Positions 18,378-44,212 of a stretch of 64,000 nt of DNA are shown here, one piece after another. Made by a program: the position numbers and the translations under genes. The notes below the pieces were generated by a model, which was not told where the DNA came from, ran no database searches, and saw only the letters and a list, made by a program, of their open reading frames with translations. How positions within the stretch are numbered: the stretch's first letter is position 1; each line of letters begins with the position of its first letter. The stretch is from Octopus sinensis (Eukaryota): contig NC_043009.1 in the NCBI RefSeq assembly GCF_006345805.1, forward strand, positions 12,400,001 through 12,464,000, read 5' to 3'.

Positions 18378-18677
18378 ATGAATACAGCACTTTTGATGTT
18401 TCTACTCTTACTGTTATATTATAACGGCTTATTAGTTTACTCAAAAGATGACACCAAATGTGACGGGATTTATCGTAAAGGGCGTGTAGGATATGGTAGA
18501 TTTGCGACTTTACATAGCTCCAACATTACAGAATGTGCCAAGCTTTGTTTTTATAGACAACAATGTAAAGGATTCAGTTTCTGTTTCGAGAAAAGTGAGT
18601 GTAATCTTCACAAACGTTGCGAAAATTTTAAAGAGGACACCAACTATGTATCTAGCTTAATCGAAAATTGGAATCCG
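18378..18677 (+). CDS. Paralog 2 exon 1: signal peptide plus PAN/apple domain (100 aa)
   Basis: [22 protein letters not shown] hydrophobic leader; [17 protein letters not shown]...CNL matches the PAN C-x3-C-x5-C-x2-F-x-F..C pattern; donor CCG|GTCAGT, phase 0. Confidence 0.85.
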
Positions 18678-18780
18678 GTCAGTGTCAAAAATTATTTTAT
18701 TTGGTGTTTTTTTTGTCTTTACGTTTCCTTTCAATTTTGGTGATGATACATTCAAAATCCGTATATAATTTTATAGCATT

Positions 18781-18838
18781 CTTCTTCTTCTTCTTCTTCT
18801 TCTTCTTCTTCTTCTTCTTCTTCTTCTTCTTCTTCTTC

Positions 18839-18904
<66 letters not shown>

Positions 18905-18920
18905 CATTATTATTATTATT
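18781..18920. repeat. (CTT)n(ATT)n microsatellite
   Basis: Direct reading. Confidence 0.95.
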
Positions 18921-19180
18921 ATTCAGTAGTTTTATTTTTATAGCGTGCTTTCACTTCACTACCGAGCGCAGCTCTGTGTGCCTTGGGTATGTGCTCTGAT
19001 TTGTTGTGCTGGTCTGATGGTTACTGTATTGAAAGTGTTTTGCGTAGGATGTGTGCAGTGCCCAGTAGTGCAATTTTCTGCATGTTATATATATTTGTAA
19101 GTCCTGGTGTTTTTGTTATGTATTTGTCTGAATATTTTTTTTATCATACCTAATGCGCCTACTATGATAGGAATTGTTTC

Positions 19181-19185
<5 letters not shown>
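18921..19185 (-). mobile_element. R4/Dong-clade non-LTR element 3' end inserted in (TAA)n
   Basis: TETIPIIVGALGMIKK then IQKIALLGTAHILRK-type restriction-like-endonuclease C-terminus across frames; 3' UTR runs into the TAA array. Confidence 0.7.
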
Positions 19186-19229
<44 letters not shown>

Positions 19230-19269
19230 TTATTATTATTATTATTAAGGCGGTGAGATGACACATGCA

Positions 19270-20310
19270 TCACCAGGCACATGCATCACAACTATATGTG
19301 TGCGACATGGTGATCTCATATCAAGATAAACAGCGCATGACCTTACAAGTGGGGCCCAGTAGGGAATTTTCTTCTGGTTGAGTAGCTCATCCCGCTCAAA
19401 AGGTCCCTGAATAAGGGTTGTTTAAGGATGTTAAATGGAATACTCATTTTGCCAGAGGTTAATTATCCAAGCCCCAAAGAATTCCTCTCAACACATGGCT
19501 ATGATGCTCCCCCACTACTTCTGCTCGTGATCAGAGATACACATATCGTCAGCCACTAAGGGACATGCTCAACTGGTTAAAGTCAAACAACTGACAATCA
19601 AATCTTTGATATTGAGCAGAATATTTGCTGTAGCCCATCTTTTATACCAAGACAAAACAATGTACATGATAACACTGTCAATCAGTTAAGATCAGAAGCC
19701 ATGAGAGCTACTGCCTGGTACTGCATCAGGGCATTTACTACTACTATTATTATTATTATTATTATTATTATTGAGTGAGCGAGCAGAGCATGCCATCAAA
19801 GTGACACTGGGGTAAAATATACGAAGCTCAGTATACCCATCATGACTACCCGTCTGATAAGGGTACACCAGGCACATGCATCACAACCATATGTGCGCGA
19901 CATGGTGATCTCATATCAAGATAAACAGCACATGACCTTGCAGGTGGAGCCCAGTTAGAATTTTCTTCAGATCGAGTAACCCATCCTGCTCAAAAGGTCC
20001 CTGAATAAGGGTTGTTTAAGGACGTTCAACGAAACACCCATGTTTCCCGAGGTGAATTATTCAAACCCCAAAGAATCCTTCTCAACACATGGCTATGATG
20101 CTCCCCCACTACTTCTGCTCGTGATCAGAGATGCACATATTGTCAGCCACTAAGGGACATGCTCAACTGGTTAAGGTCAAACAACTGACAAGCAAATCTG
20201 TGGTATTGAGCAGAATATTTGCTGTAGCCCATCTTTTATACCAAGACAAAACAATGTACATGATAACACTTCCAATCAGTTAAGATCAGATTATTATTAT
20301 ATTATTATTA
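19270..20310. mobile_element. Two tandem copies (about 470 and 540 bp) of an (ATT)n-flanked non-coding repeat
   Basis: caccaggcacatgcatcacaa...cagttaagatcaga present at about 19270-19735 and 19772-20290; class not determined. Confidence 0.7.
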
Positions 20311-20658
20311 TTATTATTATTATTATATTATTATTATTATTATGGCGGCGGCGAGCTGGCAGCCTCGTGTTCGGAAGTCTGTTAATTTTTCTTCAAACTT
20401 GTTTACTGATTGTTTTTAGATATTTGTTGAACTGTAATTTTTATAACCCGGCTCGCCACAAGCAGGGCCAGCTGGGTTGGCAAAAATAATCGGCATTTAA
20501 GGGCGAATTTTGACAATTCAAAATTCCATATTTTGAAAAAAATTTGCAACATGGTATCTCAAATCGATGGTGCTTACGCTTTTTGTAACAGCCTCTGTGA
20601 GATACCATTCCCTTCGCTACCTAATGTGGTTGAGGAGAGGAAGGGCGGCAGCAGCAGA

Positions 20659-21062
20659 GGAGGTACAATGGCCCAGTGGTTAGGGCAGCGGACTCACGGT
20701 CGGAGGATCGTGGTTTCGATTCCCAAACCGGGCGTTGTGTGTGTTTACTGAGCGAAAACACCTAAAAGCTCCACGAGGCTCCGGCAGGGGGTGGTGGCGA
20801 CCCCTGTTGTATTCTTTCGCCCCAACTTTCTCTCACTGTTTCTTCCTGTTTCTTGTCTCCGACTTCCTACGCAACCGCTGAGCCTGGATGCGCCTTCATC
20901 CATCCGTCGATGCTCTCGGTGTCGAGGGTTGACCTGCTTTCTCTTCTATGGGTCTTACGAATAGCAAAGGACCACGTTTCGAACTTCTCCCATCTTGCGA
21001 GCTAGGGGACGAAGAACGTTCTCTCAACAGCAACAGCAGCAACAGCAGCAGTAGCAACAATA
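20659..21062 (+). mobile_element. SINE family B (tail variant 3, ending in (CAG/CAA)n)
   Basis: Shared head and core, different tail. Confidence 0.82.
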
Positions 21063-21180
21063 ACAGTATCATCCCCACCATCAGCATCGATGGGGACGTG
21101 AAGGAGGGGAGTGGAGGAGAACAGCAACACTGCTACCACCACTGCTATCACAAGGACTTGCTAGAACAACAACAGCAGCT

Positions 21181-21366
21181 GTGGAGGCGCAATGGCCCTA
21201 TGGTTAAGGTAGCGGACTCGCGGTCGTAAGAACGCGGTTTCGATTCCCAGACCGAACATTGTGAGTGTTTATTTAACAAAAACACCTAAGCTCCACGAGG
21301 CTCCGGCGGGATGGGGGTGAACCCCGCTGTACTCTTTCACCACAACTTTCACTCTTTCTTCCTACT
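21181..21366 (+). mobile_element. SINE family B, 3'-truncated
   Basis: gtggaggcgcaatggccctatggttaagg...ctccacgaggctccgg. Confidence 0.82.
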
Positions 21367-21379
21367 TCTGCCACAAAAC

Positions 21380-22102
21380 AGAGGAACCATGGTGTAACCC
21401 ACTATGGTGTGGTTAAAACAAAGAGCCAGCGTAAAATTTTGAGTTACATACACTGAGCATGCTTCGGCAAGAAATGCTTCGGTGACGAGACAATGGGTTG
21501 TTCGCAATGTTCCGAGTGGCATGGGCGCTTCAAAATGCAGAACCACCGCTTAATCGAGAGTATGCTCATCGTCTTCTTCGACATACGCGGTATTGTACAT
21601 CGAAAATTCGTCCCCCAGCGCTCAGACTCTCAATCGAGAGTTCCGCTGCGACGTTTTCAAGTGTCTGAGGGAGGATATTTGCCTAAAGCGACCTGATCTG
21701 TGGAGCGCAAAGTATTGGATTCTTTAGGACGACAATACACCTGGTCAGCGTGCTCTGCTCGCTCGTAAGTCTCTCGCCAAAAACAACATAGTATCGCTTC
21801 CACACACGCCCTATTCGTCAGATTTAGCACTTGCGGACCGCTGTCTCTTCTCCAAGATGAAAATGCAGCTCAAAGGGCATTGTTTTAACACCGTTGTTGA
21901 GATAAAGAACGAATTATTGAAGGTCCTCAACTTGCTTACGGAAAGCAACATCCCGGCCGGATTCCAAAAGTGGCAGGAACGTTGTGAGCGGAGTTTTGCT
22001 GCGCAAGGTAATTATTTCGAAGGAGATGATGTTAAAACTCAGGTAAATAAGTTATGTTTTATTAAACGTAACTAGTCTGGGAACTTTTTGTTACCACCTC
22101 GT
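21380..22102 (+). mobile_element. mariner remnant
   Basis: MLIVFFDIRGIVH, HTPYSSDLA-like and KWQERCER...GNYFEG motifs; terminal ...accacctcgta. Confidence 0.8.
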
Positions 22103-22554
22103 AGACCTTGCGTTATCGGACATCCTTGACGGGCCGAGTGTGTGGTTCAAAATTCCCTTTTGCTTGTTTGGTAGCACTCCAGCATTTGTCTCAATCATGT
22201 TTTAAATTCGTTTCTTCAGAATGTGTGCAGAGGAGAGGAACTATATTCCACGCGCCAAGCGAAAAATATGAATATAGAGATCTATTATGAATCTCTTTTA
22301 TATTTTATTTAAAATGCTGCATTCGTTTCGTCGACTGGGTCTCACGTAACTCTTTGGTTAGTTATGAATTATTTCTATAAATCATTTACAGAAAGCTTCG
22401 CAGTTGTTTTCCTTCCTTGGTGCATTTATTATTGCAAGGCTTTGAAGAAAGCTTTTAATAGGTGATATTCTAATCATTGTCTATCAAATTAGAAGTTGCC
22501 GTATACTTTATCCTTCTTGTAAAACAAAACTGTCATTCTTGTGTCCATTATTAG

Positions 22555-22642
22555 CGTATAGCTGGAAGCTGCTTCAATCATTCGTGTAAGGATTGGGAAA
22601 TGTGTTTACCTGGAATCAATACCTACTACTGCTTAGAATTGG
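22555..22642 (+). CDS. Paralog 2 exon 2: 4-Cys EGF-like module RIAGSCFNHSCKDWEMCLPGINTYYCLEL
   Basis: ttattag| acceptor, |gtaagt donor, phase 0 to 1 bridges exons 1 and 3 exactly. Confidence 0.82.
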
Positions 22643-24180
22643 GTAAGTTACATTTTGTATGTCAATGTTGATGTAAAAATATTTCGTCTTATATTCTCGT
22701 TATGTAGAAAATCCCTTTTGCTTAACCCTTTAGCTTTCACAGTACTCTGTCCAAAGTAACATTGTCTTGAATTAATCCTGCATTATCTTGTGGCTTTAAG
22801 ATCTCGGTCATGTGATAATTTATTTTTACTATAACATTGTAAAGTAAATGTGAGATTTTGGATCTAGTCACTTTGATAACAAAAGAGGCAGAATATTTTG
22901 GCCGCATGTAGCCTTTTTAAATGCTGAAGGGCGAAATCATTATTCTGTGAAGGAAGTAAAAGCCCTATCAGATTATTGGCGTGGAAGTTAGAGATTTCTA
23001 GGTAAAGATAATATATTTAATGTGCAACTTTGCTTAATATTGTGTAGTTAATGCAAAACATTAAAATTTGCTAAAGCGTGTGTTCAGAATTCCAGGGAAT
23101 ACTCATTTGAGTAATGTGGATTTTACTAATTCGTTTAATATGAGATATATTTCATGCTGTATCTTAAAACATAGTCTGATAATCTTGTCTACTCATAGAT
23201 TTAAAGACAGGTTAAATAGTTGTGAGGGAATGAAGTTCAATTCAACCGTGTAGTTCTTGATACTATTGTACTGCTCACCATTATGTGCAAACATCATTTA
23301 CAATTGGTGTCGGTTCAGGGGCGTAGGTTTTATCCGCCCTGTTCAATAACCAAATTGACTGCCTTCTTTTTTAAATGTACAGTAGATTCAGACATATATA
23401 AAATGGCCACCCTATGAGGTTTTCACTATTCACAGGGAAAAGGACGGAAGAAAATATAACTTGACATTCTGACAGAACATCTGAACGGAGCTTAGAGTGA
23501 AATGTACAATATCCACTTGACAAAAAGCATATTCGAATTGTTCTGGAGATTTCTTTTTCCTAATTCTGAGATAAGCCTGTTTATCAATAGTATGTCGTTC
23601 TAATACGAAATAACTTTCAAGAATCGGTCGGTACTTAACAGCGAATATTAGACAAAAAAGAAATGTATTTTACGAGCGAGATCTTAAATATTCATTGGAT
23701 ATTTACATCGATTCGCGTGTTTCTTAAAAACAAAAGGTGCGATTTTTTACATTTTGTTGCCAAAGAAGCCTCTGTGTATTCGTTCAACCTGCAAGAAATA
23801 ACAACCAAATTGTTGTTTTCGAATCAAGTATCTGACCCCCTTGAGAAAGTGCTTTCCAAGTAGTCCTAGATATACAAAAATTCGAGATAGTTGTTGCAGG
23901 AACGGCTTTCATCATAAATCTACTTCGTCACGGCTTACTTGAATATTTAGCAACAACAAGAACAATAACAATTCCATCCGATTCTTCCATCTTTTCCTCA
24001 ATCAAGTAGTTATAATTTTCTTACGATCATTAAGGCAACAGAAACTAACAAGTGTTATTCACAGTAATGTTTGCAGGATTTGAACTCCCAACATTGTGGC
24101 CGAGACTTAATACTGAAAATTAGTTATATAGATCACTATTTTATTCTTCCCCGCTAACTCATGAAGTTTTCTCTTGCTTT

Positions 24181-24347
24181 GGCGCAGGAGTGGCTGTGTG
24201 GTAACTAACTTGCTAACCAACCACATGGTTCCGGGTTCAGTCCCACTGCGTGACATCTTGGGCAAGTGTCTTCTGCTATAGCCTCGGGCCGACCAAAGCC
24301 TTATGACTGGATTTGGTAGACGGAAACTGAAAGAAGCCCGTCATATA

Positions 24348-24412
<65 letters not shown>

Positions 24413-24620
24413 GTGTGTGTATATGTTTGTGTGATGTGTTTGTCCCTCTAGCATTGCTTGACAACCGATGCTGGTGTGTTTACGTCCCCGTCACTTAGCG
24501 GTTCGGCGAAAGAGACTGGGCTTACAAAGAATAAGTCCCGGGGTCGAATAACTCGACTAAAGGCGGTGCTCCAGCATGGCCGCAGTCAAATGACTGAAAC
24601 AAGTAAAAGAGTAAAAGAGT
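24181..24620 (+). mobile_element. SINE family A, full length
   Basis: GGCGCAGGAGTGG head through (AAGAGTA)n tail. Confidence 0.92.
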
Positions 24621-25074
24621 TATTCTTGTAGATTGGGTGAATTGTATTGGATTACACAAATTTGTTACAATAACATTCACGATGAGAAGATTTGAAATTA
24701 TAATTTTGACGGCAAAGACTACTGCAAGCTGTTGGATTAGTCTGAAGCAGCTTTCCGAAACAGAGACATTATACTCACTGTCATAATACGGTGGTTATTT
24801 AGTCAACGACCGAACTATAAGTTTTAAAACTAACTCTGTCAACTTAATATTCGTTCACTGCAGTTATTTAGCAGGAATATTGATTGTTTTTGATTCAATC
24901 GACTAATCCTTTCCTTGGATATACGACCTTGTACTCACAAATATGAGTTAGACGAACTTGTTTGAACGAATATGTTACAGTATATATTATTTGTACTTGC
25001 ATTATCGACCCTAGAGGGATAACAAGTAAATTCAGCTTCAATGACGTCTGAGCTCAAGGCTAACTACAGAGCGT

Positions 25075-26330
25075 TCGAGCAGGTACTGAAAAGCTTTTGG
25101 CTTTGGGTAAAAGAAAATACAGGAGGGTCAGTTGATTATGCTTTTATTCATCATATGTCCCTCTAAGATTCACACATTCATCACAGCGGTCCTTCGGGTT
25201 TTTAAGCACAGGTTTCTTTTATTGCAGGGATCCTTCGGCTTTTTTTAAGCAGGTTTTTTAACTCGGAAGTTTGGGCTTCTAATCGTACCTTTCGCGATAC
25301 CCTTAAAGTCAGGAACTTTTCAATTCCCCCTCGTACAATTAGTCACATTCTAGAATTATTCTACCTATCCTGTTCTACAAGTCTTTTATTAACAAGCAAA
25401 AAACTCATTAAGTAAATATAGTAGAATAGGAAGAGTGCTCAACTTGTTCAAAGCCACAGTCGCACACAACAGCCATTGAAACCAAGGACTGGTGTGCTGG
25501 AGCATTGCTCTGATGAAAAGATCTCTTCGTCAATTTTCTTTCGTGTATGGTTTTGAGAGCCTTTCGCAACTGCCTCAGCAAATTGGGATAACATTCTTCA
25601 TTGATGGTGTGGCACTTTTGAAGATAGTCAATAAACACAATGCTTTTGCATCCCCAAAAAGTGAGGTCATCATCACTTTCCCTGCAGATGAAATGACCTT
25701 GGCTTTCTTTGGAGCAGGTGAGGAAGAGTGTTTCCATTGCATAGATTGTCTCTTTGTCTCTGGCTCAAAGCGATAACCCCAACACTCATCCAAACATTCA
25801 ACGAAGCCGGCTGGATATAATTCAAACAATGTCAGATTTCCCCGTGCTATAATCGGACCAGTGTGTTTTTGATTAAGTGTCATAAGACGTGGCGGCCACC
25901 GAGCATAAACCTTCATCACGCCAGGTTCATTGTGCAAAATAGTCTGAACTCTCTCACGAGATATGCTAAGAGCATCTGGTATTTAATTTATAGACAACTG
26001 TTTGTCCTCTATCTCAATGTGGTGAACATGATCAATGTTTTGCTCGGTGGAAGCAGTTGCAGGACGTCCACACCTTGAGGCATCTTCAAGACTCTCCCAT
26101 AGCAACCATGTCAGCATGAATATCCGTGAGAGCTTAAACCCCTTTTCTGCAGGTAATTGAGATCACCACTATGCCGAATATTGCCCGCTTTCAAGACATG
26201 TCGCTACTATAATTACATTTAAGTTTTCTTTGAACAGTGAGATTGTGTTGAAATTAATGCTTGCAAGATTTCACAACTCTAGTATCACCCCTTCACAGTG
26301 AGCCTATGAAATTTTCAGTCTAACCTCGTA
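25075..26330 (-). mobile_element. mariner element, degenerate
   Basis: tacgaggttagactgaaaa terminus at 26330; KVYARWPPRL, ETKRQSMQW and HQSNAPAH motifs; left boundary approximate. Confidence 0.8.
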
Positions 26331-26836: not shown

Positions 26837-27004
26837 ATTACATTGACAGAGACTGTGGTCTACCACTCCAGACGAACTCCTCGGTGATCATTTGGGGAAA
26901 TGAGCGGTTTGTGGGATATAAGTGTTTGGTGAATATGATTGGAGAAGACACTAGAACATCAAGGTGCAAGGACAGCTCAGTTTGGTCGAAACCAGAAGCA
27001 TGTC
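26837..27004 (+). CDS. Paralog 2 exon 3: sushi/CCP domain
   Basis: DCGLP...YKC...SRCKDSSVWSKPEAC has 4 Cys and the conserved Trp; ctaatag| and |gtaagt; phase 1-1. Confidence 0.85.
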
Positions 27005-29730: not shown

Positions 29731-30539
29731 TAACAGGTTATTCGTGTAAACTGCCATATATTGTATCCTTCAATATGACAAACAGTACTTACAGCGAAAG
29801 TTCCTGGAAGTATGAATGCCAGGAAACCAATACAAGTTGCCGTATGAAAACAATTTGGAATAACGGATCAAACCATTATCTCGGTACGGCTTTAATCATT
29901 TTTAGTTATTATTCTTTAAAATCAAAGTAAAACATGGAAATATCTACTCAAAATTACGTATCTAAAACCTTTCTTTATTACTAATACTATCATTATATTC
30001 GTTATTATTGTTGTTGTTTTGTTGTTGCTGTGAGCTGGCAAAATCGTTTGCAAGCGGGGTAAAATGCTTAGCGGCATTTCGTTCGTCTTTACGTACATAA
30101 CCCTCTACTGATCAGGCAATGCGGTCGGTGGAAGTTCTGTAGGGGATTAGTGACGGGCAAGGGCGACGAAATTTTTGAGGAAACTCTGGGCATAGGGAGG
30201 GATCAACTATTTCGTCTTTTTTGGAGGATTTCCGGGTCAGGGCTAATAGATAATTTCTAGAAATCCCTAACCTCAAGTGCTACTGGAGAGCTCTGTCGGT
30301 TCGGAAGTGCCGTCAGAATGACCTGTCCGAGATGTGTGCAAGGCAATGAAACGGTTCTGCATGTACTTGTCCAGTGTTCAAGTATTGCTGACTTGTGGAG
30401 CGTTGCCGAACAGCTGTCGACGTATTTAGGACGGTTATCCGAGTCCATCGTGAAGATTGCCCCGCTACCTTCTTTTTGCTGAGAAGAGAAGTCCGTTTTC
30501 GTCTGGCTGGTAGCTATAGCGAAAGAGACAGTGTGGTGA

Positions 30540-32677: not shown

Positions 32678-32812
32678 ATATTTCCTGTACAACGAAGAAT
32701 AATGTAAGCAGTCAGTTAACAAATTTCAGTTATTTTTGTGCCAAAAGTGAAATCGTCGATAATTTTGATAAAATACGATCCTGTTCATCACTGAAATCTA
32801 TACACCCTTGTC
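32678..32812 (+). CDS. Paralog 2 exon 4: degenerate sushi-like 4-Cys module ISCTTK...SYFC...RSC...HPC
   Basis: taaacag| and |gtaagt; phase 1-1; homologous exon on the minus strand at 61508-61654. Confidence 0.85.
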
Positions 32813-33190: not shown

Positions 33191-33398
33191 AAATATAAGG
33201 CATGCAGGAATCTTAATACCGAGTACGCTTTTATCTGTAGATTTTTCTGAATTTATAAGATGAAAATAGTCAATTCCTCCTCTGAAATCGCTAAAATCTG
33301 TTTAAGAAACAGATTATTTCCCAACCAGTAAAAAATTTATTACCTGAAGAAGAAAAACAAAGCTGTTGTATATTTAAGAGATGAGGAATTATGTATAT

Positions 33399-33561
33399 TA
33401 TTTACAATTGACGGATATTTATCCTTATCTTGTTTGTTGTTAACACAACGTTTCGGCTGATATACCCTCCAAGACACCTGATGAAGGCTGGAGGGTATAT
33501 CAGCCGAAACGTTGTGTTAACAACAAACAAGATAAGGACAAATATCCGTCAATTGTAAATA
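33399..33561. repeat. Penelope-type inverted repeat, 73-bp arms (1 mismatch), 17-nt spacer
   Basis: 33399-33471 versus 33489-33561. Confidence 0.92.
33473..33518 (+). ncRNA. Minimal type-I hammerhead ribozyme
   Basis: GACAC-CTGATGA-A-GGCTG(GAGGGTATAT)CAGCC-GAAAC-GTT-GTGTT; palindromic AACGTT stem III; predicted cut after 33513. Confidence 0.68.
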
Positions 33562-34454
33562 GCGTGAATGATATAAACAAAGCTATTTTTCAACAACTGC
33601 TCAATGACAAAATAGATCAAGAAACAAGTCCAGTAAAATTATGCTCTGGCTGTGTCAGTCTATATTTCAATCGCAAACCGAATATTTGGACATGTATAAG
33701 GCACGCACTAGTTGGAGTAAAATTTTCAAAGTTTTACCAACTTCAGAAAGCCATAAGATTTAAAGAGGACAAAATTAACATTTCTTGTTTCAAAGAAGCT
33801 ACCTTCTAGCTTATCTAAAGTACTAAGTAATTCAAAGAAACACAAGCATCAGGCTACTCGATTATAATTTGCAGAGGTATTTCTGCTTGTTCTTATATTT
33901 TTTATTGAATGCATAACATATAAAATTATAATTTTCCTTGACTATTAAACTAATTTTTATAGTGTATACTTACAAAATTAACAGATACACAACTATTTAC
34001 CCGGTTTGGTTTCCAGTCATCATCAGGTATTTTATTGCTGGGTGCGTGAACTTTCCTAAGACTGTATTTACAAGTTCTCCTGGGGATAATATTACTATCA
34101 GCTTTAATTTAAAAATAAAGGCTCCTAACTCGAATCTAATCAAGGGAAAGTGTACACACCCAGGAATAGAATATCAAATGGCGATCTGATGGCAAACAAA
34201 TGCAAACTCAACATAAATTTTAGATTTCCACCTTCTTTCTTACTGAATTCACAAAGAGATAGTTGAAGGAATGGCAGGAACGTGGTGTGAAAGACAGAAA
34301 GATCAATCGATCGATAAATACATACATACATATACACATACATATATGTGCATATATATATGTATATGTATATGTATATATAGATATGCACGTTATATAA
34401 TGTCGATCGAATGAGAAATGAGCGCATAATATATATTGCAGAGAATATAAAGAT

Positions 34455-35659
34455 CACAGTAATGTAACTTGTCGCCATTTTTAATTAATTTCGCGCATGT
34501 GCAATGTTTGAGAACCGACTGTGAAAAAAGCAGTGCAATGATGCAATTTGCTCTGTCAGAAATTTGGAAACGACATGCTGTACTGCTTGATATTCGCACC
34601 GGAAGCTCCAACACTAATATTTCAGAGTGTTTGGGTGTCGATCCGAGGACAGTACAAAGGATTCGGAAAAAGTTGAATGAGTCTGGTGGTGATTACGAAT
34701 GTACGGCAGCTTGGAGAACTAGCTCTGATCGTTCTGATAAGAAAAGAACTCCTGAATGTGTTGGTGAAATCCAGGCCACGTTTGACAACGATCTCTCCAA
34801 GTTAATCAGGTACATCGCCATGGACATGGTAGTGTCTGAGTTTCTTATCAAGTAGGTAGTGCATAAAGACATTTGGTATTCCTCATACAAGATGAAAAAG
34901 GAACAATTTTTATTCCAAGCTATCAAGAACAAGAGGAAAGACCACGCCTCGATGCTTTTAAACAAACTCAAGCATCCCTTCCCACCGAACATGCTTTGGT
35001 TTTTCTCAGACGAGAAAAATTTCTGCCAGAATCAGATTGTGAACACACGGAACAACTGTTGGTTTGGTGTGTCCCAAAACATGTACCGAGAGTGATAAAA
35101 ATCAAACATCCAGTCAACATCATGGTGTTTGGAATGATCATTAGTGATGGCAACGTTATGCCTCCATTCATCTTCCACACGGCATCAGACTACATCAGGA
35201 GGGTGACAGCTGGAAAACCCTGTCTGGCAACAGGACTCTGTACCATGCCACACAATCAGGGGAACCCAGTCATAGCTGTGAGATAATTTCTGCGACCACA
35301 TCACCCCTATCATCTGGACACCTAATTTCCCAGACTGCAAAGCCTTTAATTATTGTGTGGGGCGCAGTTGAACGAGAGACCAACAAAACTCCTTGTAACA
35401 CCAAAGATAAACTGAAAGCAAGGATTATGGCAGGATTCACCAACGTAAAGAAGGACACAGTCCAGAAGAGTTGCAGGAGATTCGGAAGTCGTCTGGATGC
35501 CGTAGTCGAAGCTAATGGCGATTTTATTGAATGAATTTACTCTTTAGTGTTTCAAGTTATTTTTATGTAATTCTGGACAGTGTAATTTTGTATAATTTTA
35601 GACAGTTTTACTTTCATTTTAGCGTAATTTAGACGACAATTTATTCGCTGCACCGTGTA
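34455..35659 (+). mobile_element. maT/DD37D-type Tc1-mariner element, degenerate
   Basis: WFFSDEKNFCQ, IMVFGMIISDG and WTPNFPDC/WGAVE motifs; 3' terminus ...ttattcgctgcaccgtgta. Confidence 0.82.
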
Positions 35660-36118: not shown

Positions 36119-36277
36119 ATATAAAATGCAACAAACCAAGTAATAAACCGAGAGTAGATGATTGGCAAAAAAACTGCACCCGAACTATTCTCTGCAACTG
36201 GATGAGGTTTCCTAAACTTCAGACAATAAAATTTTGCGCACCTCGTAAACGAATGGAAAATGGTACGATAAGTTTTG
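36119..36277 (+). CDS. Paralog 2 exon 5: 4-Cys module IKCNKP...NCTRTILC...FCAP...MENGTISF
   Basis: tgaatag| and |gtaagt; phase 1-1; homolog at 59771-59932 (-) shares Cys spacing and MENGTISF. Confidence 0.85.
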
Positions 36278-36445
36278 GTAAGTTTAAGAATTAAAGTTCT
36301 TCAATTTATTTATTTTCCTCAGATGATCGATTGGTTTATTTATTTAGCACATTAACGAATTGACCACTCAATCAATGAAACAATCAATTCTGTGTATTCC
36401 ATATGTATACGTGAATGTGTGCGTGTGTTCAGCCCAGGAACCGAT

Positions 36446-36707
36446 ATTGTCGTGTTTCGGGACGATCAATGTTTTTATTTTTTTTTTGCCAAATAAACCT
36501 ACGTACTATGTATTTTTTCCTTCACTCGTTTATTACTGTTCTTATTTTCTTATTTTCTTATTTTATCTTTCGTCACACATCTGTGACCTCTTCAGCGACA
36601 CATTTTTCTTTTCGCGTGGGTTCTTGCTCCACTTACTCCATTCTGTTCTTCTAAGGTGTGTATCCTTATATGCGTATGCGTTTATGTCCTTCTTTGTGTG
36701 TGTGTGT

Positions 36708-36756
<49 letters not shown>

Positions 36757-37190
36757 ATGCTTGTGTGTATGTCATATTTTTTACAGCAGTGTGGCCGTCC
36801 CCTCAGCAGCCCCATCTAATCACCCCCATTGTACTTCTGCTGATGGGAAGGTCACACTGCTGCTAAAAACTATGATACACACACAAGCATACACACACAC
36901 ACACACGCGCGCACGCACACACACACACACATTCACAAACAAGGACACAAGCACGTGCGCACATAAAGTTACACACCTGAGAAGAACAGAATGGAGTAAG
37001 TGGAGCAAGAACACGAACGAAAAGGAAAATGTGTTGCTGAAAAGGTCACAGGTGTGTGTCGAAAGATTTCCGGACAATGGAGATGAGTTAAAATAATAAA
37101 ATAAGAACAGTGATAAACGAGAGTAGAAGAAATATTTAGTTGGTGTGTGTTTATTTGGCAAAAAAAATGACCGTCCCGAAATACAACAAT
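36446..37190. repeat. Long imperfect inverted repeat (about 360-bp arms, 27-nt loop)
   Basis: 36446-36809 versus 36837-37190, including mirrored (TG)n/(CA)n tracts. Confidence 0.9.
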
Positions 37191-37588: not shown

Positions 37589-37594
<6 letters not shown>

Positions 37595-38359
37595 GGCAGT
37601 CAAAGACTGTTTTTTCCATTTTCTGTAAGTGGAGATTCCAAAAACGAAGGCCCGTGCGGCTCACCTGCTGCTAGCCCTCTTATTTACTTTACTATATACT
37701 GAACCTTACAAAGTTCCTGACGATAAATTTGTCGTATTTACATACCGAAATTTACCGGTAAATAATTGTTGGTTACATGAAAAACCACAGAAAAATTATT
37801 TATCATTTTTATTGCATTACCATGTGGATTCCTCATTCCATTACGATTACCCAGAAGGCGCGCATGGCAGAATTTTGGAGGGAAAATTTACGTTCCCAGT
37901 CGTTACTTAGTTTTAACATCTGCACACTTCCCCCCACTATCTGATGTCGCTGGGTCAGAAGTGAGGGCCTGTGGCATTTGGTAAAGTTATCGAATATAGC
38001 GCCGATGACGGAAATCAAACTACTTTTCTATGTTTGTGATCCAGAAACATGTTCGTTATTAACGGTAAGTGATTGTTTGCGTCTATTTGCTACTCCGGTT
38101 TTGTGTATGTGAGCCGCACGGGCCTTCGTTTTTGGAATCTCCACTTACAGAAAATGGAAAAAACAGTCTTTGACTGCCATTTCTAATTCCTTCGGTATGA
38201 GGCGAAACAGCCTGCTGCTAGCTCTCTTATTTACTTTACTATATACTGAACCTTACAAAGTTCCTGACGATAAATTTGTCGTATTTACATACCGAAATTT
38301 ACCGGTAAATAATTGTTGGTTACATGAAAAACCACAGAAAAATTATTTACCATTTTTAT

Positions 38360-38361
<2 letters not shown>
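37589..38361. repeat. Compound inverted (76 bp) plus direct (150 bp) duplication
   Basis: 37589-37664 inverted at 38109-38184; 37665-37814 direct at 38212-38361. Confidence 0.92.
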
Positions 38362-38392
<31 letters not shown>

Positions 38393-38397
38393 GTATG

Positions 38398-38682: not shown

Positions 38683-38715
<33 letters not shown>

Positions 38716-38924
38716 AATTTATATATGAGGATAATATCGATATTTAAGTATCAATATTATCAAGTGGCCAGCATGGAAAAATACTGTACAAAGGTAATAA
38801 TTTTTAACAATTAAAAATGAGAGTGTCTAAGAGACACCAACATGCCGAAATAGCAGTCGAAATTCTGACTATAAAAACCACGTTAAGTGTTCATATCGTA
38901 CCATGAGATAAGACAGAGGGACAA

Positions 38925-38973
<49 letters not shown>

Positions 38974-38974
<1 letters not shown>

Positions 38975-39351: not shown

Positions 39352-39404
39352 TTTGCTACACACTACTTTCCATCCTTAATAATGAAACTTGGTAGATCCA
39401 AAAG

Positions 39405-39997: not shown

Positions 39998-40513
39998 TAT
40001 CAGCTATAAGCTGGTGTAAAGAGAATCTTCTCCGTATTTATTGTTAAATGCATGTTCCAGAATGCCTCAAATAAGTTGACATATTTATGAAGGTACGCCA
40101 GTTTCCAGTCATAGTCAAACATCTGATCAGATAAACGTAATACAGGTACATCAGGGGAAGCTTAAGAATCCAGAAGATCGCTTAACCAGAAAACTTAAAC
40201 CGAAGCTCAATTTTCGATGTCAACGTGCTTTATGGAAACATCTAAGAAACATCAAATGCTACATTTATATACTATGGGTTTTATATCCTGCTCAAAATCA
40301 TTCTCCATCTTAAGTCACGTATATCTGACGGAGGGATTTCACCTAAAAGCTATTCTCTAAGAAATTCAAACGGCGACAGGGGAAAACTAAATGCTATTTT
40401 CGTCATTCAGCAAACGTTCACCCATCTGCAGATATTTGTTTTTTCTCGATATCTGACCATTATTTACTGTGATACCAAGTTACATTGTAGTGTTTTACAT
40501 AATTTATTTACAG

Positions 40514-40592
40514 AAGGCGTGATGAAAATGGTGTGTGAAGTTTTTGATCGATTTTCGCTTGAAGCTAATAAAAGAAAACTCGCAGCTAGGTT
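40514..40592 (+). CDS. Paralog 2 exon 6: GVMKMVCEVFDRFSLEANKRKLAAR
   Basis: tttacag| and |gtaagt; phase 1 to 2; 79-nt homolog at 57170-57248 (-) with first 26 nt identical. Confidence 0.88.
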
Positions 40593-40644
40593 GTAAGTAT
40601 TGAAGCAGTCTAACAAATATCGTTGTATATTCACAATTATTTTT

Positions 40645-40765
40645 ATCTTTTACTTGTTTCAGTTGTTAGACTGCGGCCATGCTGAGGCACCACTTTCAAG
40701 AATTTTTAGTCGAATAAATCGACCCAGTATTTGTATTTTTTAAACCTGGTATTTGTTCTATCGGT
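40645..40765 (-). mobile_element. SINE family A 3' fragment
   Basis: tcttttacttgtttcag...ctgcggccatgctg...ttctatcggt. Confidence 0.7.
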
Positions 40766-41398
40766 TCATATAATATCAATACAGATTTGAAACAATGGCC
40801 ACCTTCCTTGCATGAGAAGTATAGCCCGCCTACACCGCCATTGATGTTGAACTTTCCTGTAACGCTAAGCAGCTTGCGAATTCAAACACCTGTCTCATTC
40901 AGTCCTTGTACTAACCGGTTCAGAAGGCCAAACGTAGGCGTGACTACAGGCACTACAAAGGTGTCGTGGGCAATCTATTTGTTGTAAGCTGAGAGTTCTG
41001 GTGACAATATTCTCTTTAATATTCATTTCTAGTTCACTCCTTATTTATTTGTAAGCGACAGCAGATACATAAGAAAAAGGAGGAAAGGTGCAGAAAGTCC
41101 AAGTCGTTTTTTCTCATGTAACTACTGCCGCTTACTTAGCAATGCTGTGACACCACATGACCTTTCTTGACCAATTGCAGCCCATCTTGCGGTAGCCATC
41201 TTGGATTTCCTGCACCTCTCCGTTTATTCGAATTTCCGCCAGCCTAAGGAAGAGGGCCTGTTAGGGGATTTGAAAGTTGAAGTAGCCCGGGATCGGAATC
41301 AAACAGTTTTGAACAGTCTATATACGCACATGAAATATAGTACAATATAAATACAAAACAGTATAAAATATTTTATATGTATACATACATATATGCTA

Positions 41399-41439
<41 letters not shown>

Positions 41440-41515
41440 TATATATATATATATATACATGCATATATATATATATATATATATATAGATATGTATATGT
41501 ATATACACACACATA

Positions 41516-41562
<47 letters not shown>

Positions 41563-42065
41563 GTATGTGTGTGTATGTATGTATGTGTGTATGTATGTAT
41601 GTATGCATGTATGTATGTGAATGTATATATGTGTATGCATGCATGCATGTATGTATGTATGTACATATGTATGTGGTATAAACAGAATATAAGACATTTT
41701 ACATGTATATGTATACTTATATATAATCATATCCTTAAATCCGTAAACCTTTAAAATGTTACACATTATATATACATACTTTGTGTGTATATATTCATTC
41801 ATATTCATCTACATGCGTTCATATGTGCATACATACATACACACACCCATACATACACACACATATATACGTACATATATACATACATATACACACATAC
41901 ACATACCTACTTAAATACATGCATACATATATACATACATACATATAGAAGTTTATCATTTAAGTATATATGAACATGTTTTGACATGCAACTTTACGCA
42001 TGAGAATACATACAAAAAAGAAAATATACAAATCTGCATATATATATATATATATATATATTTCT

Positions 42066-42281
42066 TAACTACCCACAAGGGGCTAAACACAGAGGGGACA
42101 AACAAGGACAGACAAAGGGATTAAGTCGATTACATCAACCCCAGTATGTAACTGGTACTTAATTTAACGACCCCGAAAGGATGAAAGGCAAAGTCGACCT
42201 CGGCGGAATTTGAACTCGGAACGTAACGACAGACGAAATACGGCTACGCATTTTGCCCGGCATGCTAACGTTTCTGCCAGC
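42066..42281 (-). mobile_element. SINE family C
   Basis: acccacaaggggctaaac...gtcgacctcggcggaatttgaactc...ctgccagctc. Confidence 0.8.
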
Positions 42282-42351
42282 TCTCATGCAAGGAAGGTGG
42301 CCATTGTTTCAAATCTGTATTGATATTATATGAACCGATAGAACAAATGCC

Positions 42352-42570
42352 GTTGATGTTGAAATTCTAATGAAGGAGCCTCTGATCTAGGTTAGAAACC
42401 GGCTCTTTCTCCATTAGCCAGAGATCTAAAAATAAAACTAAATAATGACATACATACATACAAACAAAACACCCGGTTGTTGATGTTGAAATTCCAGTGA
42501 AGCAGCCTTAGATCTAGGTTAGAAACCGGTTCTTTATTAGCAAGAAATCTTGAAATAAACTGAATAATGA
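42352..42570 (+). repeat. Two tandem copies of an approximately 100-bp (TACA)n-tailed repeat
   Basis: ttgatgttgaaatt...gatctaggttagaaaccgg...aataatgac twice. Confidence 0.75.
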
Positions 42571-42632
42571 CAAACATACATATATACATACATACATACA
42601 TACATGCATACATACATACATACATACATACA

Positions 42633-42666
<34 letters not shown>

Positions 42667-43043
42667 CATACATATATACATACATAAGTGTCTCATCTCA
42701 GAGGATACCCGAATCACATTCAGTCTGATTTACTTTAATCCTTACATGTGTGGAGATATGACTATTCATGTTGCCATATATTCATCGCCATAGATCTTGA
42801 TAAAATAAAAAACGGATCAGCAAATAAAAAACCATACTGAGACATCTCTACGTTTTCGGTTTTAAGTGATAAAAGTTTGTATGACACTTGCCTCTATCTT
42901 GGTCGCAATATCAGGTTCCAATGACAAGCATTTATTTCTTTATTACCCACAAGGGGCTAAACACAGGGAGGACAAACAAGGACAGACAAGTGGATTAAGT
43001 CGATTACATCGATATCTCTTAAGGCCTCAAAGTAAAACCATGG

Positions 43044-43245
43044 GCGTGGCTGTGTGGTAAGAAGCTTGCTTCCCAACCACATGGCTCATGGTTCAGTCCC
43101 ACTGGATGGCACCTTGGGTGAGTTTCTTCTACTATAGCCTCGGCCCGACCAAATCCTTGAGTGGATTTCGTAGGCAGAAACTGAAAGTCGTCGTCGTGTG
43201 TGTGTGTATGTGTGTGTGTGTGTGTGTGTTTGTGTGTGTGGTGTG

Positions 43246-43320
<75 letters not shown>

Positions 43321-43587
43321 GTTGTGTTTGTGTATGTGTGTGTATGTGTGTCTGTCTGTGTCTCTGTGTCTGTGTGTGTTTGCTCCCTCACTACCAACGC
43401 CTGACAACTGGTGTTGGTGTGTTTACGTTCGCTTAACTTACTGGTTCGGCAAAAGAGATTGCTTGGCTAAGTAATAGGCTGAGAATTAGTCCTGAGGTCG
43501 ATTTGTGCAATTAGAATAAAAAAACCCTTCCGGGCGGTGCTCCTAGGCGACCGCATTCAAATGTCTGAAACAAGTAAAAGGTTAAAG
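43044..43587 (+). mobile_element. SINE family A, diverged
   Basis: Head, (TG)n and tail all recognisable. Confidence 0.82.
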
Positions 43588-43856
43588 GCATACATACATA
43601 CATACATACATACATACATACATACATACATACATACATACATGCATGCATACATGTATACATACAAACATCCATCCATCTATATATACATACATACGTA
43701 CGTACATGCATGCATACAAACATCCATCCATACATACATATATACGTATGTACGTATATACATACATACCTGCCTGCATGCACACATAAATGCATGTATG
43801 TATGCATACAGACGTGTGCTTTCATGCATACATGTATATATATCTTTTCGTTTCAG

Positions 43857-43964
43857 GTTAGATTTTCAGGTTGGTGTTTGGAATAACATTTTCACTACAG
43901 AAAAAGAAACGACAACGATGGCATTAGACATCGAGACCCCCGTTCCGACCAACGAAACAAACAG
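43857..43964 (+). CDS. Paralog 2 exon 7: Thr/Glu-rich tail exon LDFQVGVWNNIFTTEKETTTMALDIETPVPTNETN
   Basis: gtttcag| and |gtaatt; 108 nt, phase 2-2. Confidence 0.82.
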
Positions 43965-44104
43965 GTAATTTTAACTGTAGTAACGTTAACCATAATGACA
44001 TACATACATACATACATACATACATACATACATACATACATACATACATGTATGCATGCACACGTGCGCTTTCATTCATACATGTATATATCTATTCGTT
44101 CCAG

Positions 44105-44212
44105 CAATGGTCCTCATGGTGGTGATTGGAATCAAACTTCCACTATGGAAATGGAAATGACAACGAAGGTATCAAACAACGACGACCCCGTTACGACCCA
44201 GGGAACAAACAG
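44105..44212 (+). CDS. Paralog 2 exon 8: duplicated tail exon NGPHGGDWNQTSTMEMEMTTKVSNNDDPVTTQGTN
   Basis: gttccag| and |gtaatt; 108 nt, phase 2-2; 248 bp from exon 7 with the same intron module. Confidence 0.78.

What the first reader, a model, noticed from the sequence alone, without database searches (positions are those of the whole stretch)
18378..44212. Hidden 8-exon gene for a secreted PAN/apple-EGF-sushi-(4-Cys)2-mucin-like protein, one of three clustered paralogs
Only exons 1, 3, 7 and 8 are visible in the ORF track. Exons 2, 4, 5 and 6 were found from GT-AG sites, and all phases join (0,1,1,1,1,2,2) into 381 uninterrupted codons. The protein has a signal peptide, no transmembrane segment so far and 9 N-x-S/T sequons. 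Exons 4-6 are independently confirmed by homologs on the minus strand. PAN, EGF and CCP modules are established extracellular recognition domains (glycan/protein binding, complement control). I do not recognise this combination, or the exon 4-6 modules, as a named family. A lineage-specific recognition, immune, skin/mucus or gland-secretion role is inference.
Basis: partly seen in the sequence, partly recalled or inferred. Interest (0 to 1): 0.72.

Follow-up and report, generated by a model that had tools for sequence, protein, structure and literature searches.

The report
Unannotated octopus secreted apple-domain protein gene
The window holds a real, intact but apparently unannotated Octopus sinensis gene for a secreted cysteine-rich protein; it belongs to a small, fast-evolving, octopus-only family that databases already list as "uncharacterized", so it is a useful annotation fix rather than a new kind of system.

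Summary
The gene is real. The window is Octopus sinensis chromosome CM016871.1, positions 12,400,001-12,464,000. It is not the chain that homologues support. It skips a conserved exon at 29737-29883. Its "exon 8" is a tandem duplicate of the terminal exon that no homologue uses.

The homology-supported model has 8 exons and 395 aa, with a stop at 43966-43968. The order is signal peptide, PAN/apple, 4-Cys EGF-like module, CCP/sushi, three orphan Cys modules, an invariant ENGTISFEGVMKMVCE segment and a Thr-rich tail.

The closest relative is O. bimaculoides LOC106871881 (UniProt "Apple domain-containing protein"), at 66% identity with the same exon plan.

- **Paralogues:** gene A (LOC115218571) lies upstream and has no exon-1 homologue in the 9.9 kb available upstream. 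Gene C (LOC118765760) lies on the minus strand.
- **Annotation:** no database protein corresponds to this gene.
- **Distribution:** family members were found only in Octopus.
- **Evolution:** dN/dS is about 0.9 against O. bimaculoides, yet 26 of 27 cysteines are kept.

A role as a secreted binding or recognition glycoprotein is inferred, and expression is unverified. This is a new member of a known but uncharacterized family, of modest interest.

The parts
18378..18677 (+). Gene B exon 1: ATG, signal peptide (about 22 aa, ...LVYS|KDD) and PAN/apple domain; donor GTCAGT, phase 0
   Evidence: Pfam PAN_1 residues 43-84; aligned to P0010 and P0012
22555..22642 (+). Exon 2: 4-Cys EGF-like module (RIAGSCFNHSCKDWEMCLPGINTYYCLEL), phase 0 to 1
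   Evidence: the most conserved exon between paralogues, 85% nucleotide identity B-C
26837..27004 (+). Exon 3: CCP/sushi module, phase 1-1
   Evidence: hhalign versus CCP profile 95.5%, E = 1.4e-8; HMM scores; PDB profile hits to factor H and C2
29737..29883 (+).
   Evidence: present in P0001, P0003/P0010, P0004/P0011 and P0012
32678..32812 (+).
   Evidence: homologue in gene C at 61654-61508
36119..36277 (+).
   Evidence: included in the O. bimaculoides and gene C proteins, skipped in the annotated gene A protein P0001
40514..40592 (+). Exon 6: EGVMKMVCEVFDRFSLEANKRKLAAR(L), phase 1 to 2; 100% identical in nucleotides to its gene A counterpart
43857..43968 (+). Exon 7: LDFQVGVW plus Thr-rich tail. 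In-frame TAA at 43966-43968; the same bases also form a possible donor, CAG|GTAATT at 43964|43965
   Evidence: the equivalent exon is terminal in genes A and C and in O. bimaculoides
44105..44216 (+). Open in the same phase, with its own TAA at 44214-44216. Use is unverified.
   Evidence: AATAAA at about 44275 (sequence)
2951..3170 (+). Terminal exon of paralogue A (LOC115218571, P0001), with acidic SDTEE(E/V)xQR repeats. The rest of gene A lies upstream of the window.
61508..61654 (-). Paralogue C (LOC118765760, P0012) exon 5
59771..59932 (-). Paralogue C exon 6 (equivalent to exon 5b)
57170..57248 (-). Paralogue C exon 7 (equivalent to exon 6)
50928..51051 (-). Paralogue C terminal exon. Its exons 1-4 lie beyond the window end, at window-equivalent 65652-77192.

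Best explanation
Window 18378-43968 (possibly to 44216) is an intact protein-coding gene of Octopus sinensis, here called gene B. No database protein corresponds to it. It is the full-length co-orthologue of O. bimaculoides LOC106871881.

The homology-supported transcript has 8 exons (300, 88, 168, 147, 135, 159, 79 and 112 nt) and encodes 395 aa. The order of parts is:
- a cleavable signal peptide;
- a PAN/apple domain;
- a 4-Cys EGF-like module;
- one CCP/sushi module;
- three exon-sized, phase 1-1 cysteine modules with no detectable relatives;
- an invariant ENGTISFEGVMKMVCE segment;
- a short variable Thr/acid-rich tail.

There is no membrane anchor. The protein has 27 cysteines and 12 N-glycosylation sequons.

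Shown here: the gene structure, its homology, the domain calls for PAN and CCP, restriction of the family to Octopus among sampled sequences, and fast protein evolution on a fixed cysteine scaffold.

Inferred: the product is a secreted, disulfide-rich glycoprotein. Its N-terminal PAN domain binds a protein or glycan ligand, and the following modules act as a rigid stalk. This layout resembles a selectin ectodomain (binding head, EGF, CCP) without the anchor. The near-neutral dN/dS and local duplication suggest a role in fast-evolving extracellular recognition, such as immunity, reproduction or surface secretions.
For: - **Location:** searches place the window on the chromosome.
- **Gene structure:** every exon has AG/GT boundaries and compatible phases.
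- **Homology:** the full spliced protein hits P0003 (O. bimaculoides) at E = 1e-144, P0004 at 1e-87 and P0012 at 1.5e-81. Identity to P0010 is 66%.
- **Same exon plan:** unique splice solutions for O. bimaculoides and for gene C give the same 8-exon plan.
- **PAN:**
- **CCP:**, plus weak hits to multi-CCP proteins.
- **Cysteine scaffold:** 26 of 27 Cys are conserved versus O. bimaculoides. Versus gene C, 25 of 27 are conserved at 38% non-Cys identity (P about 6e-9).
- **Rate:** dN/dS is 0.90 for B versus O. bimaculoides, 0.83 for A versus B and 0.58 for B versus C.
- **Secretion:** the only hydrophobic stretch is the N-terminus.
- **Distribution:** only Octopus proteins were found, both in an exhaustive HMMER scan with P0001 and in profile and word-index searches.
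- **Not annotated:** no 100%-identical product is in the protein collection. No called gene overlaps window 40928-50927 in locus L002.
Against: - No transcript evidence could be consulted, so expression and every junction remain predictions.
- dN/dS near 1 is also what relaxed constraint would give. So is the excess of non-synonymous changes on the B lineage after the A/B split (23 non-synonymous to 4 synonymous).
- Gene B lacks the 3'UTR sequence that gene A and O. bimaculoides share. An assembly gap lies 560 bp downstream, at 44773-44872.
- RefSeq annotated the copy lacking an exon 1 (gene A) but not gene B.
- Pfam does not call Sushi or EGF in any family member.
- Structure prediction was uninformative, with mean pLDDT of 31 and 38. 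The fold and ligand of most of the protein are therefore unknown.
Confidence: 0.7

Rival explanations
1. Gene B is a young, still-open but non-functional or unexpressed duplicate (an incipient pseudogene). The working copies in O. sinensis are genes A and C.
For: - No protein from gene B is in the databases.
- The B lineage after the A/B split shows 23 non-synonymous to 4 synonymous changes, and A-B dN/dS is 0.83.
- Gene B has lost the conserved 3'UTR and has a rearranged, duplicated 3' end.
- With A-B dS of only 0.09, my rough estimate is that an ORF staying open by chance over this time is not improbable.
Against: - All 8 exons are open and all 14 splice sites are canonical.
- All 20 cysteines shared with gene A are retained.
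- Gene B is the only A/B-type copy with exon 1 (signal peptide plus PAN) in the sequence available. Gene A has no exon-1 homologue within 9.9 kb upstream.
- Gene A is just as fast-evolving (16 non-synonymous to 6 synonymous), and the family as a whole has a high dN/dS. The rate alone therefore does not single out gene B.
Confidence: 0.2
2. One reading: exon 4 (29737-29883) is skipped and exon 7 is spliced to the duplicated exon at 44105-44212.
For: - The chain is open for 381 codons, and exon 4 is phase-symmetric, so skipping it keeps the frame.
- Isoforms that skip or shorten modules exist in this family. P0001 skips exon 5b, P0003 shortens the sushi exon and P0002 skips exons 4-5b.
- CAG|GTAATT is a plausible donor, and exon 8 is open only in the matching frame.
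- Exon 7 versus exon 8 differ almost only by non-synonymous changes: sd 1.2, nd 28.8, dN/dS about 7.8.
Against: - Every annotated homologue includes the exon 4 equivalent.
- In every homologue the exon 7 equivalent is terminal.
- The exon 7/8 comparison rests on 30 differences in 36 codons. Their distribution over codon positions (7, 16, 7) is only marginally non-uniform, P = 0.07.
Confidence: 0.1
3. The gene continues past 44212 into further repeat exons or a membrane anchor that are hidden in, or lie beyond, the assembly gap at 44773-44872.
For: - Both duplicated units end in the identical ACAAACAG|GTAATTT. A longer array of such units collapsed by the assembler is therefore conceivable.
- An N-run lies 560 bp downstream.
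Against: - Only two units exist in the window.
- No exon-like homologue lies between 44217 and gene C.
- All family members end soon after the LDFxVGVW motif, with no transmembrane segment.
- An AATAAA follows the second stop (sequence).
Confidence: 0.05
4. Genes A and B are an assembly artefact: mis-joined haplotypes or pieces of a single gene. Gene A supplies exons 2-7 plus the 3'UTR, and gene B supplies exon 1.
For: - The two copies are complementary. Gene A lacks exon 1, and gene B lacks the conserved 3'UTR.
- An assembly gap is nearby.
Against: - The copies differ by 8-18% in introns, and exon dS is 0.09. From general knowledge, that is more than allelic divergence would normally give.
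- Each copy carries its own full set of exons 2-7.
- O. vulgaris has an A-type protein with the A-type acidic tail (P0002).
Confidence: 0.04

Closest known systems
Octopus bimaculoides LOC106871881 (XP_014774122.1, 412 aa; UniProt A0A0L8IDR0 'Apple domain-containing protein'; isoform X2 XP_014774128.1)
   Same: - 66% amino-acid identity over 391 aligned residues.
- Same 8 exons and phases.
- 26 of 27 cysteines conserved.
- Same domain order, from signal peptide to the LDFxVGVW tail.
   Different: - The sushi exon is 3 codons longer in gene B.
- The tail is shorter in gene B and its exon is tandemly duplicated.
- Gene B lacks the 3'UTR that O. bimaculoides shares with gene A.
- The O. bimaculoides gene is a computational prediction with no studied function.
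Octopus sinensis LOC115218571 (P0001, gene A), the upstream tandem duplicate
   Same: - 79% amino-acid identity.
- Introns are 82-92% identical and colinear from window position about 21450 onward.
- Exon 6 is 100% identical in nucleotides.
   Different: - Gene A has no PAN/signal-peptide exon within 9.9 kb upstream.
- Its annotated protein starts at an internal Met in the EGF-like exon and skips exon 5b.
- Its sushi acceptor has shifted by 9 nt.
- Its tail is an expanded acidic SDTEE repeat.
Octopus sinensis LOC118765760 (P0012, gene C) and its O. bimaculoides orthologue LOC106871895
   Same: - Same 8-exon architecture.
- 42% identity, with 25 of 27 cysteines conserved.
- Invariant ENGTISFEGVMKMVCE segment.
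- Gene C lies tail-to-tail with gene B in the same cluster.
   Different: - It is an older paralogue, with dS about 0.83.
- Its PAN domain lacks two of gene B's seven cysteines.
- Its tail is unrelated in sequence.
- In O. bimaculoides it has alternative 3' exons.
Selectins (C-type lectin, EGF, CCP repeats, transmembrane segment), as an architectural analogy only; recalled from general knowledge
   Same: An N-terminal binding head is followed by an EGF-like module and then CCP-type modules built from phase 1-1 exons.
   Different: - The head is PAN/apple, not a C-type lectin.
- Only one clear CCP is present.
- There is no transmembrane segment or cytoplasmic tail.
- No sequence homology beyond the CCP was detected.
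PAN/apple extracellular proteins such as C. elegans LET-653 and apicomplexan MIC4; recalled from general knowledge, with a paper listed but not read
   Same: A secreted protein with an N-terminal PAN domain and a Ser/Thr-rich region. PAN domains in these proteins mediate protein or carbohydrate binding.
   Different: - There is no ZP domain, and only one PAN domain rather than several.
- The partner modules differ.
- No orthology is implied.

Membership tests
Octopus LOC106871881 / LOC106871895 family (uncharacterized 'Apple domain-containing' proteins) | Significant full-length sequence similarity | tested here: met
   E = 1e-144 to P0003, 1e-87 to P0004 and 1.5e-81 to P0012; 66% identity to P0010
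Octopus LOC106871881 / LOC106871895 family (uncharacterized 'Apple domain-containing' proteins) | Same 8-exon plan and intron phases (0,1,1,1,1,1,2) | tested here: met
   Unique splice reconstructions for O. bimaculoides and gene C, compared with gene B
Octopus LOC106871881 / LOC106871895 family (uncharacterized 'Apple domain-containing' proteins) | Conserved cysteine scaffold and the invariant ENGTISFEGVMKMVCE segment | tested here: met
   26 of 27 and 25 of 27 Cys conserved; invariant columns in alignments A2 and A5
Octopus LOC106871881 / LOC106871895 family (uncharacterized 'Apple domain-containing' proteins) | Evidence of transcription or translation | not testable with these tools
   No RNA-seq or proteome mapping was available. 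No literature mentions the family.
PAN/apple domain (Pfam PF00024 PAN_1) | Score at or above Pfam's gathering cut-off of 21.4 bits | tested here: inconclusive
   Gene B scores 21.3 bits, E = 2.4e-4. Its orthologue P0010 and paralogue P0012 score 24.7 bits and pass.
PAN/apple domain (Pfam PF00024 PAN_1) | Core motif C-x3-C-x5-C-x2-F-x-F...C-x-L with paired cysteines | tested here: met
   [26 protein letters not shown], read directly from the sequence; matched to profile positions 17-58 of 76
CCP / sushi domain (Pfam PF00084) | Match to the curated Pfam model | tested here: not met
   No Sushi hit at E up to 10 in gene B, P0010, P0011 or P0012
CCP / sushi domain (Pfam PF00084) | About 55-60 aa with four Cys, C-x-x-P start, Y-x-C, invariant Trp before Cys4, and a phase 1-1 exon | tested here: met
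   Exon 3 only. hhalign versus a CCP profile built from P0007 and P0009 gives probability 95.5%, E = 1.4e-8 over 52 columns. HMM scores are 10-19 bits end-to-end. PDB profile hits to factor H and C2 CCPs have E about 0.07. Exons 4, 5 and 5b were tested and are not significant.
EGF domain | Six cysteines forming three disulfides; match to an EGF profile | tested here: not met
   Exon 2 has only four Cys (C-x4-C-x5-C-x8-C) and gives no Pfam EGF hit. 'EGF-like' rests on the pattern alone.
Mucin / mucin-like domain | Extended Pro/Thr/Ser-rich tandem repeats | tested here: not met
   The tail is 36 aa, or 72 aa if exon 8 is used, with Ser+Thr 25% and Asp+Glu 15%, and at most two repeat units
Selectins | N-terminal C-type lectin domain and C-terminal transmembrane anchor | tested here: not met
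   Pfam finds PAN, not Lectin_C. There is no hydrophobic segment outside the signal peptide.

The most novel reading that the evidence does not exclude
The three exon-sized cysteine modules (exons 4, 5 and 5b) and the invariant ENGTISFEGVMKMVCE segment are new extracellular domain types confined to Octopus. The family (genes A, B and C) evolves under diversifying selection on a fixed disulfide scaffold, as a species-specific recognition system such as gamete, pathogen or self/non-self surface recognition. The duplicated 3' exon of gene B would be a recent, positively selected extension.
Probability: 0.2. Interest if true: 0.55.

Novelty: new member of a known kind. Interest (0 to 1): 0.3.

Why it matters
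- **Annotation:** the O. sinensis gene set appears to lack the only A/B-type copy that keeps its signal peptide and PAN domain, while it lists the copy without them. Correcting this matters for orthology tables, proteomics search databases and expression studies in O. sinensis and O. vulgaris.
- **Biology:** this is a small, Octopus-restricted, tandemly duplicated family of secreted cysteine-rich proteins. Its dN/dS is near 1 but its cysteines are fixed. That profile is typical of immune, reproductive or secretion proteins, so the family is a reasonable candidate for lineage-specific extracellular recognition.
- **Domains:** three of its modules have no detectable relatives.
- **Limits:** none of this is surprising for a cephalopod genome, and no function has been shown.

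Tried and rejected
- **Self-tblastx of the window to find paralogous exons.** The output was swamped by microsatellite and SINE matches. I replaced it with tblastn using database homologues.
- **AlphaFold2.** P0001 alone gave pLDDT 31. P0012 with an 11-row alignment gave pLDDT 38, and only residues about 190-260 reached 61-69 as a beta-meander. Neither model is usable. Foldseek against the PDB gave no match with E <= 0.001, and I treat the hits as meaningless.
- **Pfam on full proteins and isolated modules.** Only PAN was found; there was no Sushi or EGF hit.
- **Profile comparisons of the other modules.** hhalign of exons 4, 5, 5b and 6-7 against the CCP profile and against each other was not significant. 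The only exception is the trivial overlap between the exon 5b and exon 6-7 alignments.
- **CCP-like reading of exon 4 and of exon 5b-end to exon 7.** Exon 4 reads C-x-x-P...Y-E-C...C...I-W. The later stretch reads C-x-P-x-I-x-x-E-N-G-T-I-S-F...V-C...G-V-W. This is my reading of the sequence and is not statistically supported.
- **PDB profile search with exons 4-7.** Only a spurious snRNP hit at E = 1.3.
- **Idea that exon 6 is an exonised transposon fragment.** Rejected: the only copies in the window are the paralogous exons, and the similarity running past the donor is intron-flank conservation between paralogues.
- **Search for a PAN exon upstream of gene A.** None was found within 9.9 kb.
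- **Search for gene A's 3'UTR near gene B.** None was found.
- **Look-up of the P0003 locus.** It failed because only the longest isoform is on record. P0010 worked. That locus had to be brought into the scripts through DNA alignment.
- **Literature searches.** Searches on LOC, XP and UniProt identifiers, and on apple-domain octopus proteins, found nothing. The supplements of an O. vulgaris skin-mucus proteome also gave nothing.
- **tRNA scan of the window.** None found.

Full report
**Where the window comes from**

The terminal exon of the RefSeq protein P0001 (O. sinensis LOC115218571) matches window 2952-3167 at 100%. The locus that encodes it overlaps the window base for base, with the window start at L001 position 28364. 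The window is therefore Octopus sinensis chromosome CM016871.1, positions 12,400,001-12,464,000. It is AT-rich, full of (TA)n, (CA)n and TACA-type microsatellites, and has one 100-N assembly gap at 44773-44872.

**Checking the observation**

By reading the splice sites I recovered the following exons, all with AG/GT boundaries and good polypyrimidine tracts:
- exon 1, 18378-18677 (ATG; donor GTCAGT; phase 0);
- exon 2, 22555-22642;
- exon 3, 26837-27004;
- 32678-32812;
- 36119-36277;
- 40514-40592;
- 43857-43964;
- 44105-44212.

Joining exactly these eight gives 1145 nt, which is 381 codons with no stop, phases 0,1,1,1,1,2,2 and 9 sequons.

**What the homologues say about the model**

Database searches found a small family:
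- P0001 and P0002, partial proteins of O. sinensis and O. vulgaris;
- P0003 and P0010, which are O. bimaculoides LOC106871881 isoforms X2 and X1. X1 is 412 aa and is UniProt A0A0L8IDR0, "Apple domain-containing protein";
- P0004 and P0011, which are O. bimaculoides LOC106871895;
- P0012, which is O. sinensis LOC118765760.

All of them contain a 49-codon segment (RYSCKLPYIVSFNMTNSTYSESSWKYEC...NHYL). It is encoded in the window at 29737-29883, has perfect splice sites and is phase 1-1.

I reconstructed the exact exon chains of the O. bimaculoides orthologue and of P0012. Each had a unique solution that translates to the database protein. Both have 8 exons:
- O. bimaculoides: 336/88/159/147/135/156/79/139 nt;
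- gene C: 312/88/159/147/147/162/79/124 nt;
- gene B: 300/88/168/147/135/159/79/112 nt.

In all of them the exon equivalent to 43857-43968 is terminal. The supported product of gene B is therefore 395 aa, ending ...TNETNR with TAA at 43966-43968.

**The 3' end**

The two copies are 77% identical over 214 nt, with a 248-bp offset between the exon starts, and both end in the identical ACAAACAG|GTAATTT. That sequence is at once a plausible donor and, read through, Arg-stop.

The second copy is open only in the frame that splicing would give. It differs from exon 7 almost only by non-synonymous changes (sd 1.2, nd 28.8, dN/dS about 7.8). This rests on only 30 differences, distributed over codon positions as 7, 16 and 7 (P = 0.07). 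Use of this exon is therefore possible but unsupported by any homologue.

Gene B also lacks the 3'UTR that gene A and O. bimaculoides share. An AATAAA lies about 60 nt after the second stop (sequence).

**The cluster**

- **Gene A** (LOC115218571) lies upstream on the same strand, and only its last exon is in the window (2951-3170). Genes A and B are segmental duplicates. Their introns are 82-92% identical and colinear from window position about 21450 onward, which is inside gene B's intron 1.
- No PAN exon exists within 9.9 kb upstream of gene A's exon 2. The annotated gene A protein starts at an internal Met. In the sequence available, gene A therefore lacks exon 1, and gene B is the only A/B-type copy with one.
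- **Gene C** (LOC118765760) is on the minus strand at window-equivalent 50928-77192. Its exons 5-8 are in the window.
- No protein identical to any gene B exon chain is in the 5.8-billion-protein collection. No called gene overlaps window 40928-50927. Gene B therefore appears unannotated as protein-coding.

**What the protein is**

- **Signal peptide.** The N-terminus [22 protein letters not shown]|KDD is the only hydrophobic segment.
- **PAN/apple.** PAN_1 scores 21.3 bits in gene B against a cut-off of 21.4, and 24.7 bits in P0010 and P0012. The [18 protein letters not shown]...C-x-L motif is a textbook PAN core.
- **CCP/sushi (exon 3).** Pfam's Sushi model does not fire. A CCP profile I built from the multi-CCP proteins P0007 and P0009 matches exon 3 end-to-end (10-19 bits). 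hhalign gives probability 95.5%, E = 1.4e-8 over 52 columns. The family profile's only PDB hits are factor H and C2 CCPs at E about 0.07, and the alignment runs through Cys4, the linker and the "SCKxP" start of exon 4.
- **EGF-like (exon 2).** It has four cysteines in an EGF-like spacing but no profile support.
- **Orphan modules (exons 4, 5 and 5b).** Each starts 2-3 residues before a Cys and is phase 1-1, as CCP exons are. None is significantly similar to CCPs, to each other, to Pfam or to PDB sequences.
- **Invariant segment.** ENGTISFEGVMKMVCE, spanning the exon 5b/exon 6 junction, is invariant in all five aligned sequences.
- **Tail.** It is short and Thr/acid-rich, with 25% Ser+Thr. It differs between paralogues and is an acidic SDTEE repeat in gene A.

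Structure prediction failed for lack of alignment depth.

**Evolution**

Nei-Gojobori estimates over exons 1-6:
- B versus O. bimaculoides: dS 0.21, dN 0.19, dN/dS 0.90;
- A versus B: dS 0.09, dN/dS 0.83;
- B versus C: dS 0.83, dN/dS 0.58.

The cysteines are nevertheless kept: 26 of 27 versus O. bimaculoides, and 25 of 27 versus gene C at 38% identity for other residues (P about 6e-9). The family as a whole is therefore constrained as a disulfide scaffold while its surface changes fast.

After the A/B split, the B lineage has 23 non-synonymous to 4 synonymous changes, and the A lineage has 16 to 6. The neutral expectation is about 4.2 to 1. Selection on gene B alone cannot be distinguished from drift.

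Exons 2 and 6 and their intron flanks are unusually conserved between genes B and C.

The family was found only in Octopus. An exhaustive HMMER scan of 1.84 billion representatives with P0001 returned only octopus proteins plus weak CCP and low-complexity hits. Profile and word-index searches returned the same four clusters.

**Interpretation**

Shown: a real, intact, 8-exon gene for a secreted, cysteine-rich, heavily sequon-bearing modular protein. It is orthologous to an annotated but unstudied O. bimaculoides gene and lies in a three-gene cluster.

Inferred: it acts as an extracellular binding or recognition glycoprotein, with the PAN domain as the ligand-binding head on an EGF-like/CCP/Cys-module stalk. 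The fast evolution and local duplication point to immunity, reproduction or surface secretion.

The main rival is that gene B is a young, unexpressed duplicate. My evidence cannot exclude this, and I give it about 0.2.

**Novelty and score**

No named, characterised family exists, but the orthologues are already in RefSeq and UniProt. Gene B is a new, unannotated member of that known but uncharacterized family. No paper mentions these genes. Interest is modest at 0.3. It would rise to about 0.55 if the orphan modules prove to be new folds in a positively selected recognition system.

Noticed in passing
window 43757-44223: Tandem duplication covering the end of intron 6 plus exon 7 of gene B (248-bp offset between the two exon starts). 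The exonic parts (108 nt, no indel) differ at 30 sites, almost all non-synonymous (dN/dS about 7.8). The flanking intron is more similar than the exon.
   Followed up: partly
L001 1-10043 and window 18678-21450: The annotated gene A (LOC115218571) has no signal-peptide/PAN exon within 9.9 kb upstream. Colinear homology with gene B starts only about 1.1 kb before exon 2. The annotated protein starts at an internal Met and skips an intact exon 5b (L001 22693-22851).
   Followed up: partly
window 22475-22722, 40434-40672, 36278-36357 versus gene C (L002): Exons 2 and 6 and their 80-nt intron flanks are much more similar between the old paralogues B and C (72-85%) than the other exons are (61-67%). 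The flank after exon 5b is also conserved (74%). This could reflect splicing-related constraint or patchy gene conversion.
   Followed up: partly
window 30257-31734 (-): Reverse-transcriptase remnant (Pfam RVT_1, E = 3e-10) of a non-LTR-type element inside intron 4 of gene B.
   Followed up: partly
window 25408-25937 (-) and 34469-35534 (+): Transposase-like ORF fragments in introns 2 and 5. The first has a weak Pfam Transposase_1 (mariner-type) hit, E = 5e-4. The second gave no Pfam hit and is only suggestive by eye.
   Followed up: partly
window 12232-12762 (-), 10533-11345 (-), 2228-2749 (-): Transposable-element remnants between genes A and B. There is a piggyBac-type transposase fragment (DDE_Tnp_1_7, E = 3e-9; called as a gene in the public annotation). 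There is also a 270-aa ORF that looks like part of a retroelement polyprotein but has no Pfam hit, and a C2H2 zinc-finger ORF.
   Followed up: partly
window about 1025-1202, 6655-6836, 24181-24630, 43043-43580, 47495-47950, 49301-49720, 54716-55107, 56022-56430, 56556-56720: At least nine copies, on both strands, of a SINE-like dispersed repeat of about 160-450 bp with an internal (CA)n/(TA)n tract. They are 70-90% identical to one another. ARAGORN finds no intact tRNA in the window.
   Followed up: no
window 33388-33574: A near-perfect inverted repeat (palindrome) of about 185 bp in intron 5 of gene B, seen as a tblastx self-hit on opposite strands. It is possibly a MITE-like element.
   Followed up: no
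window 36490-37142 and 37591-38377: Local inverted (36490-36696 versus 37142-36936) and direct (37591-37830 versus 38108-38377, 93-100% at protein level) duplications in intron 5b of gene B.
   Followed up: no
window 19270-20343: Two tandem copies of about 595 bp (about 80-87% identical in tblastx) of a repeat in intron 1 of gene B. Further copies lie in the gene A locus (L001 2405-3955 and 16501-16825).
   Followed up: no
window 44773-44872: A 100-N assembly gap 560 bp downstream of the last candidate stop of gene B. Anything about the 3' end of the gene carries this caveat.
   Followed up: no
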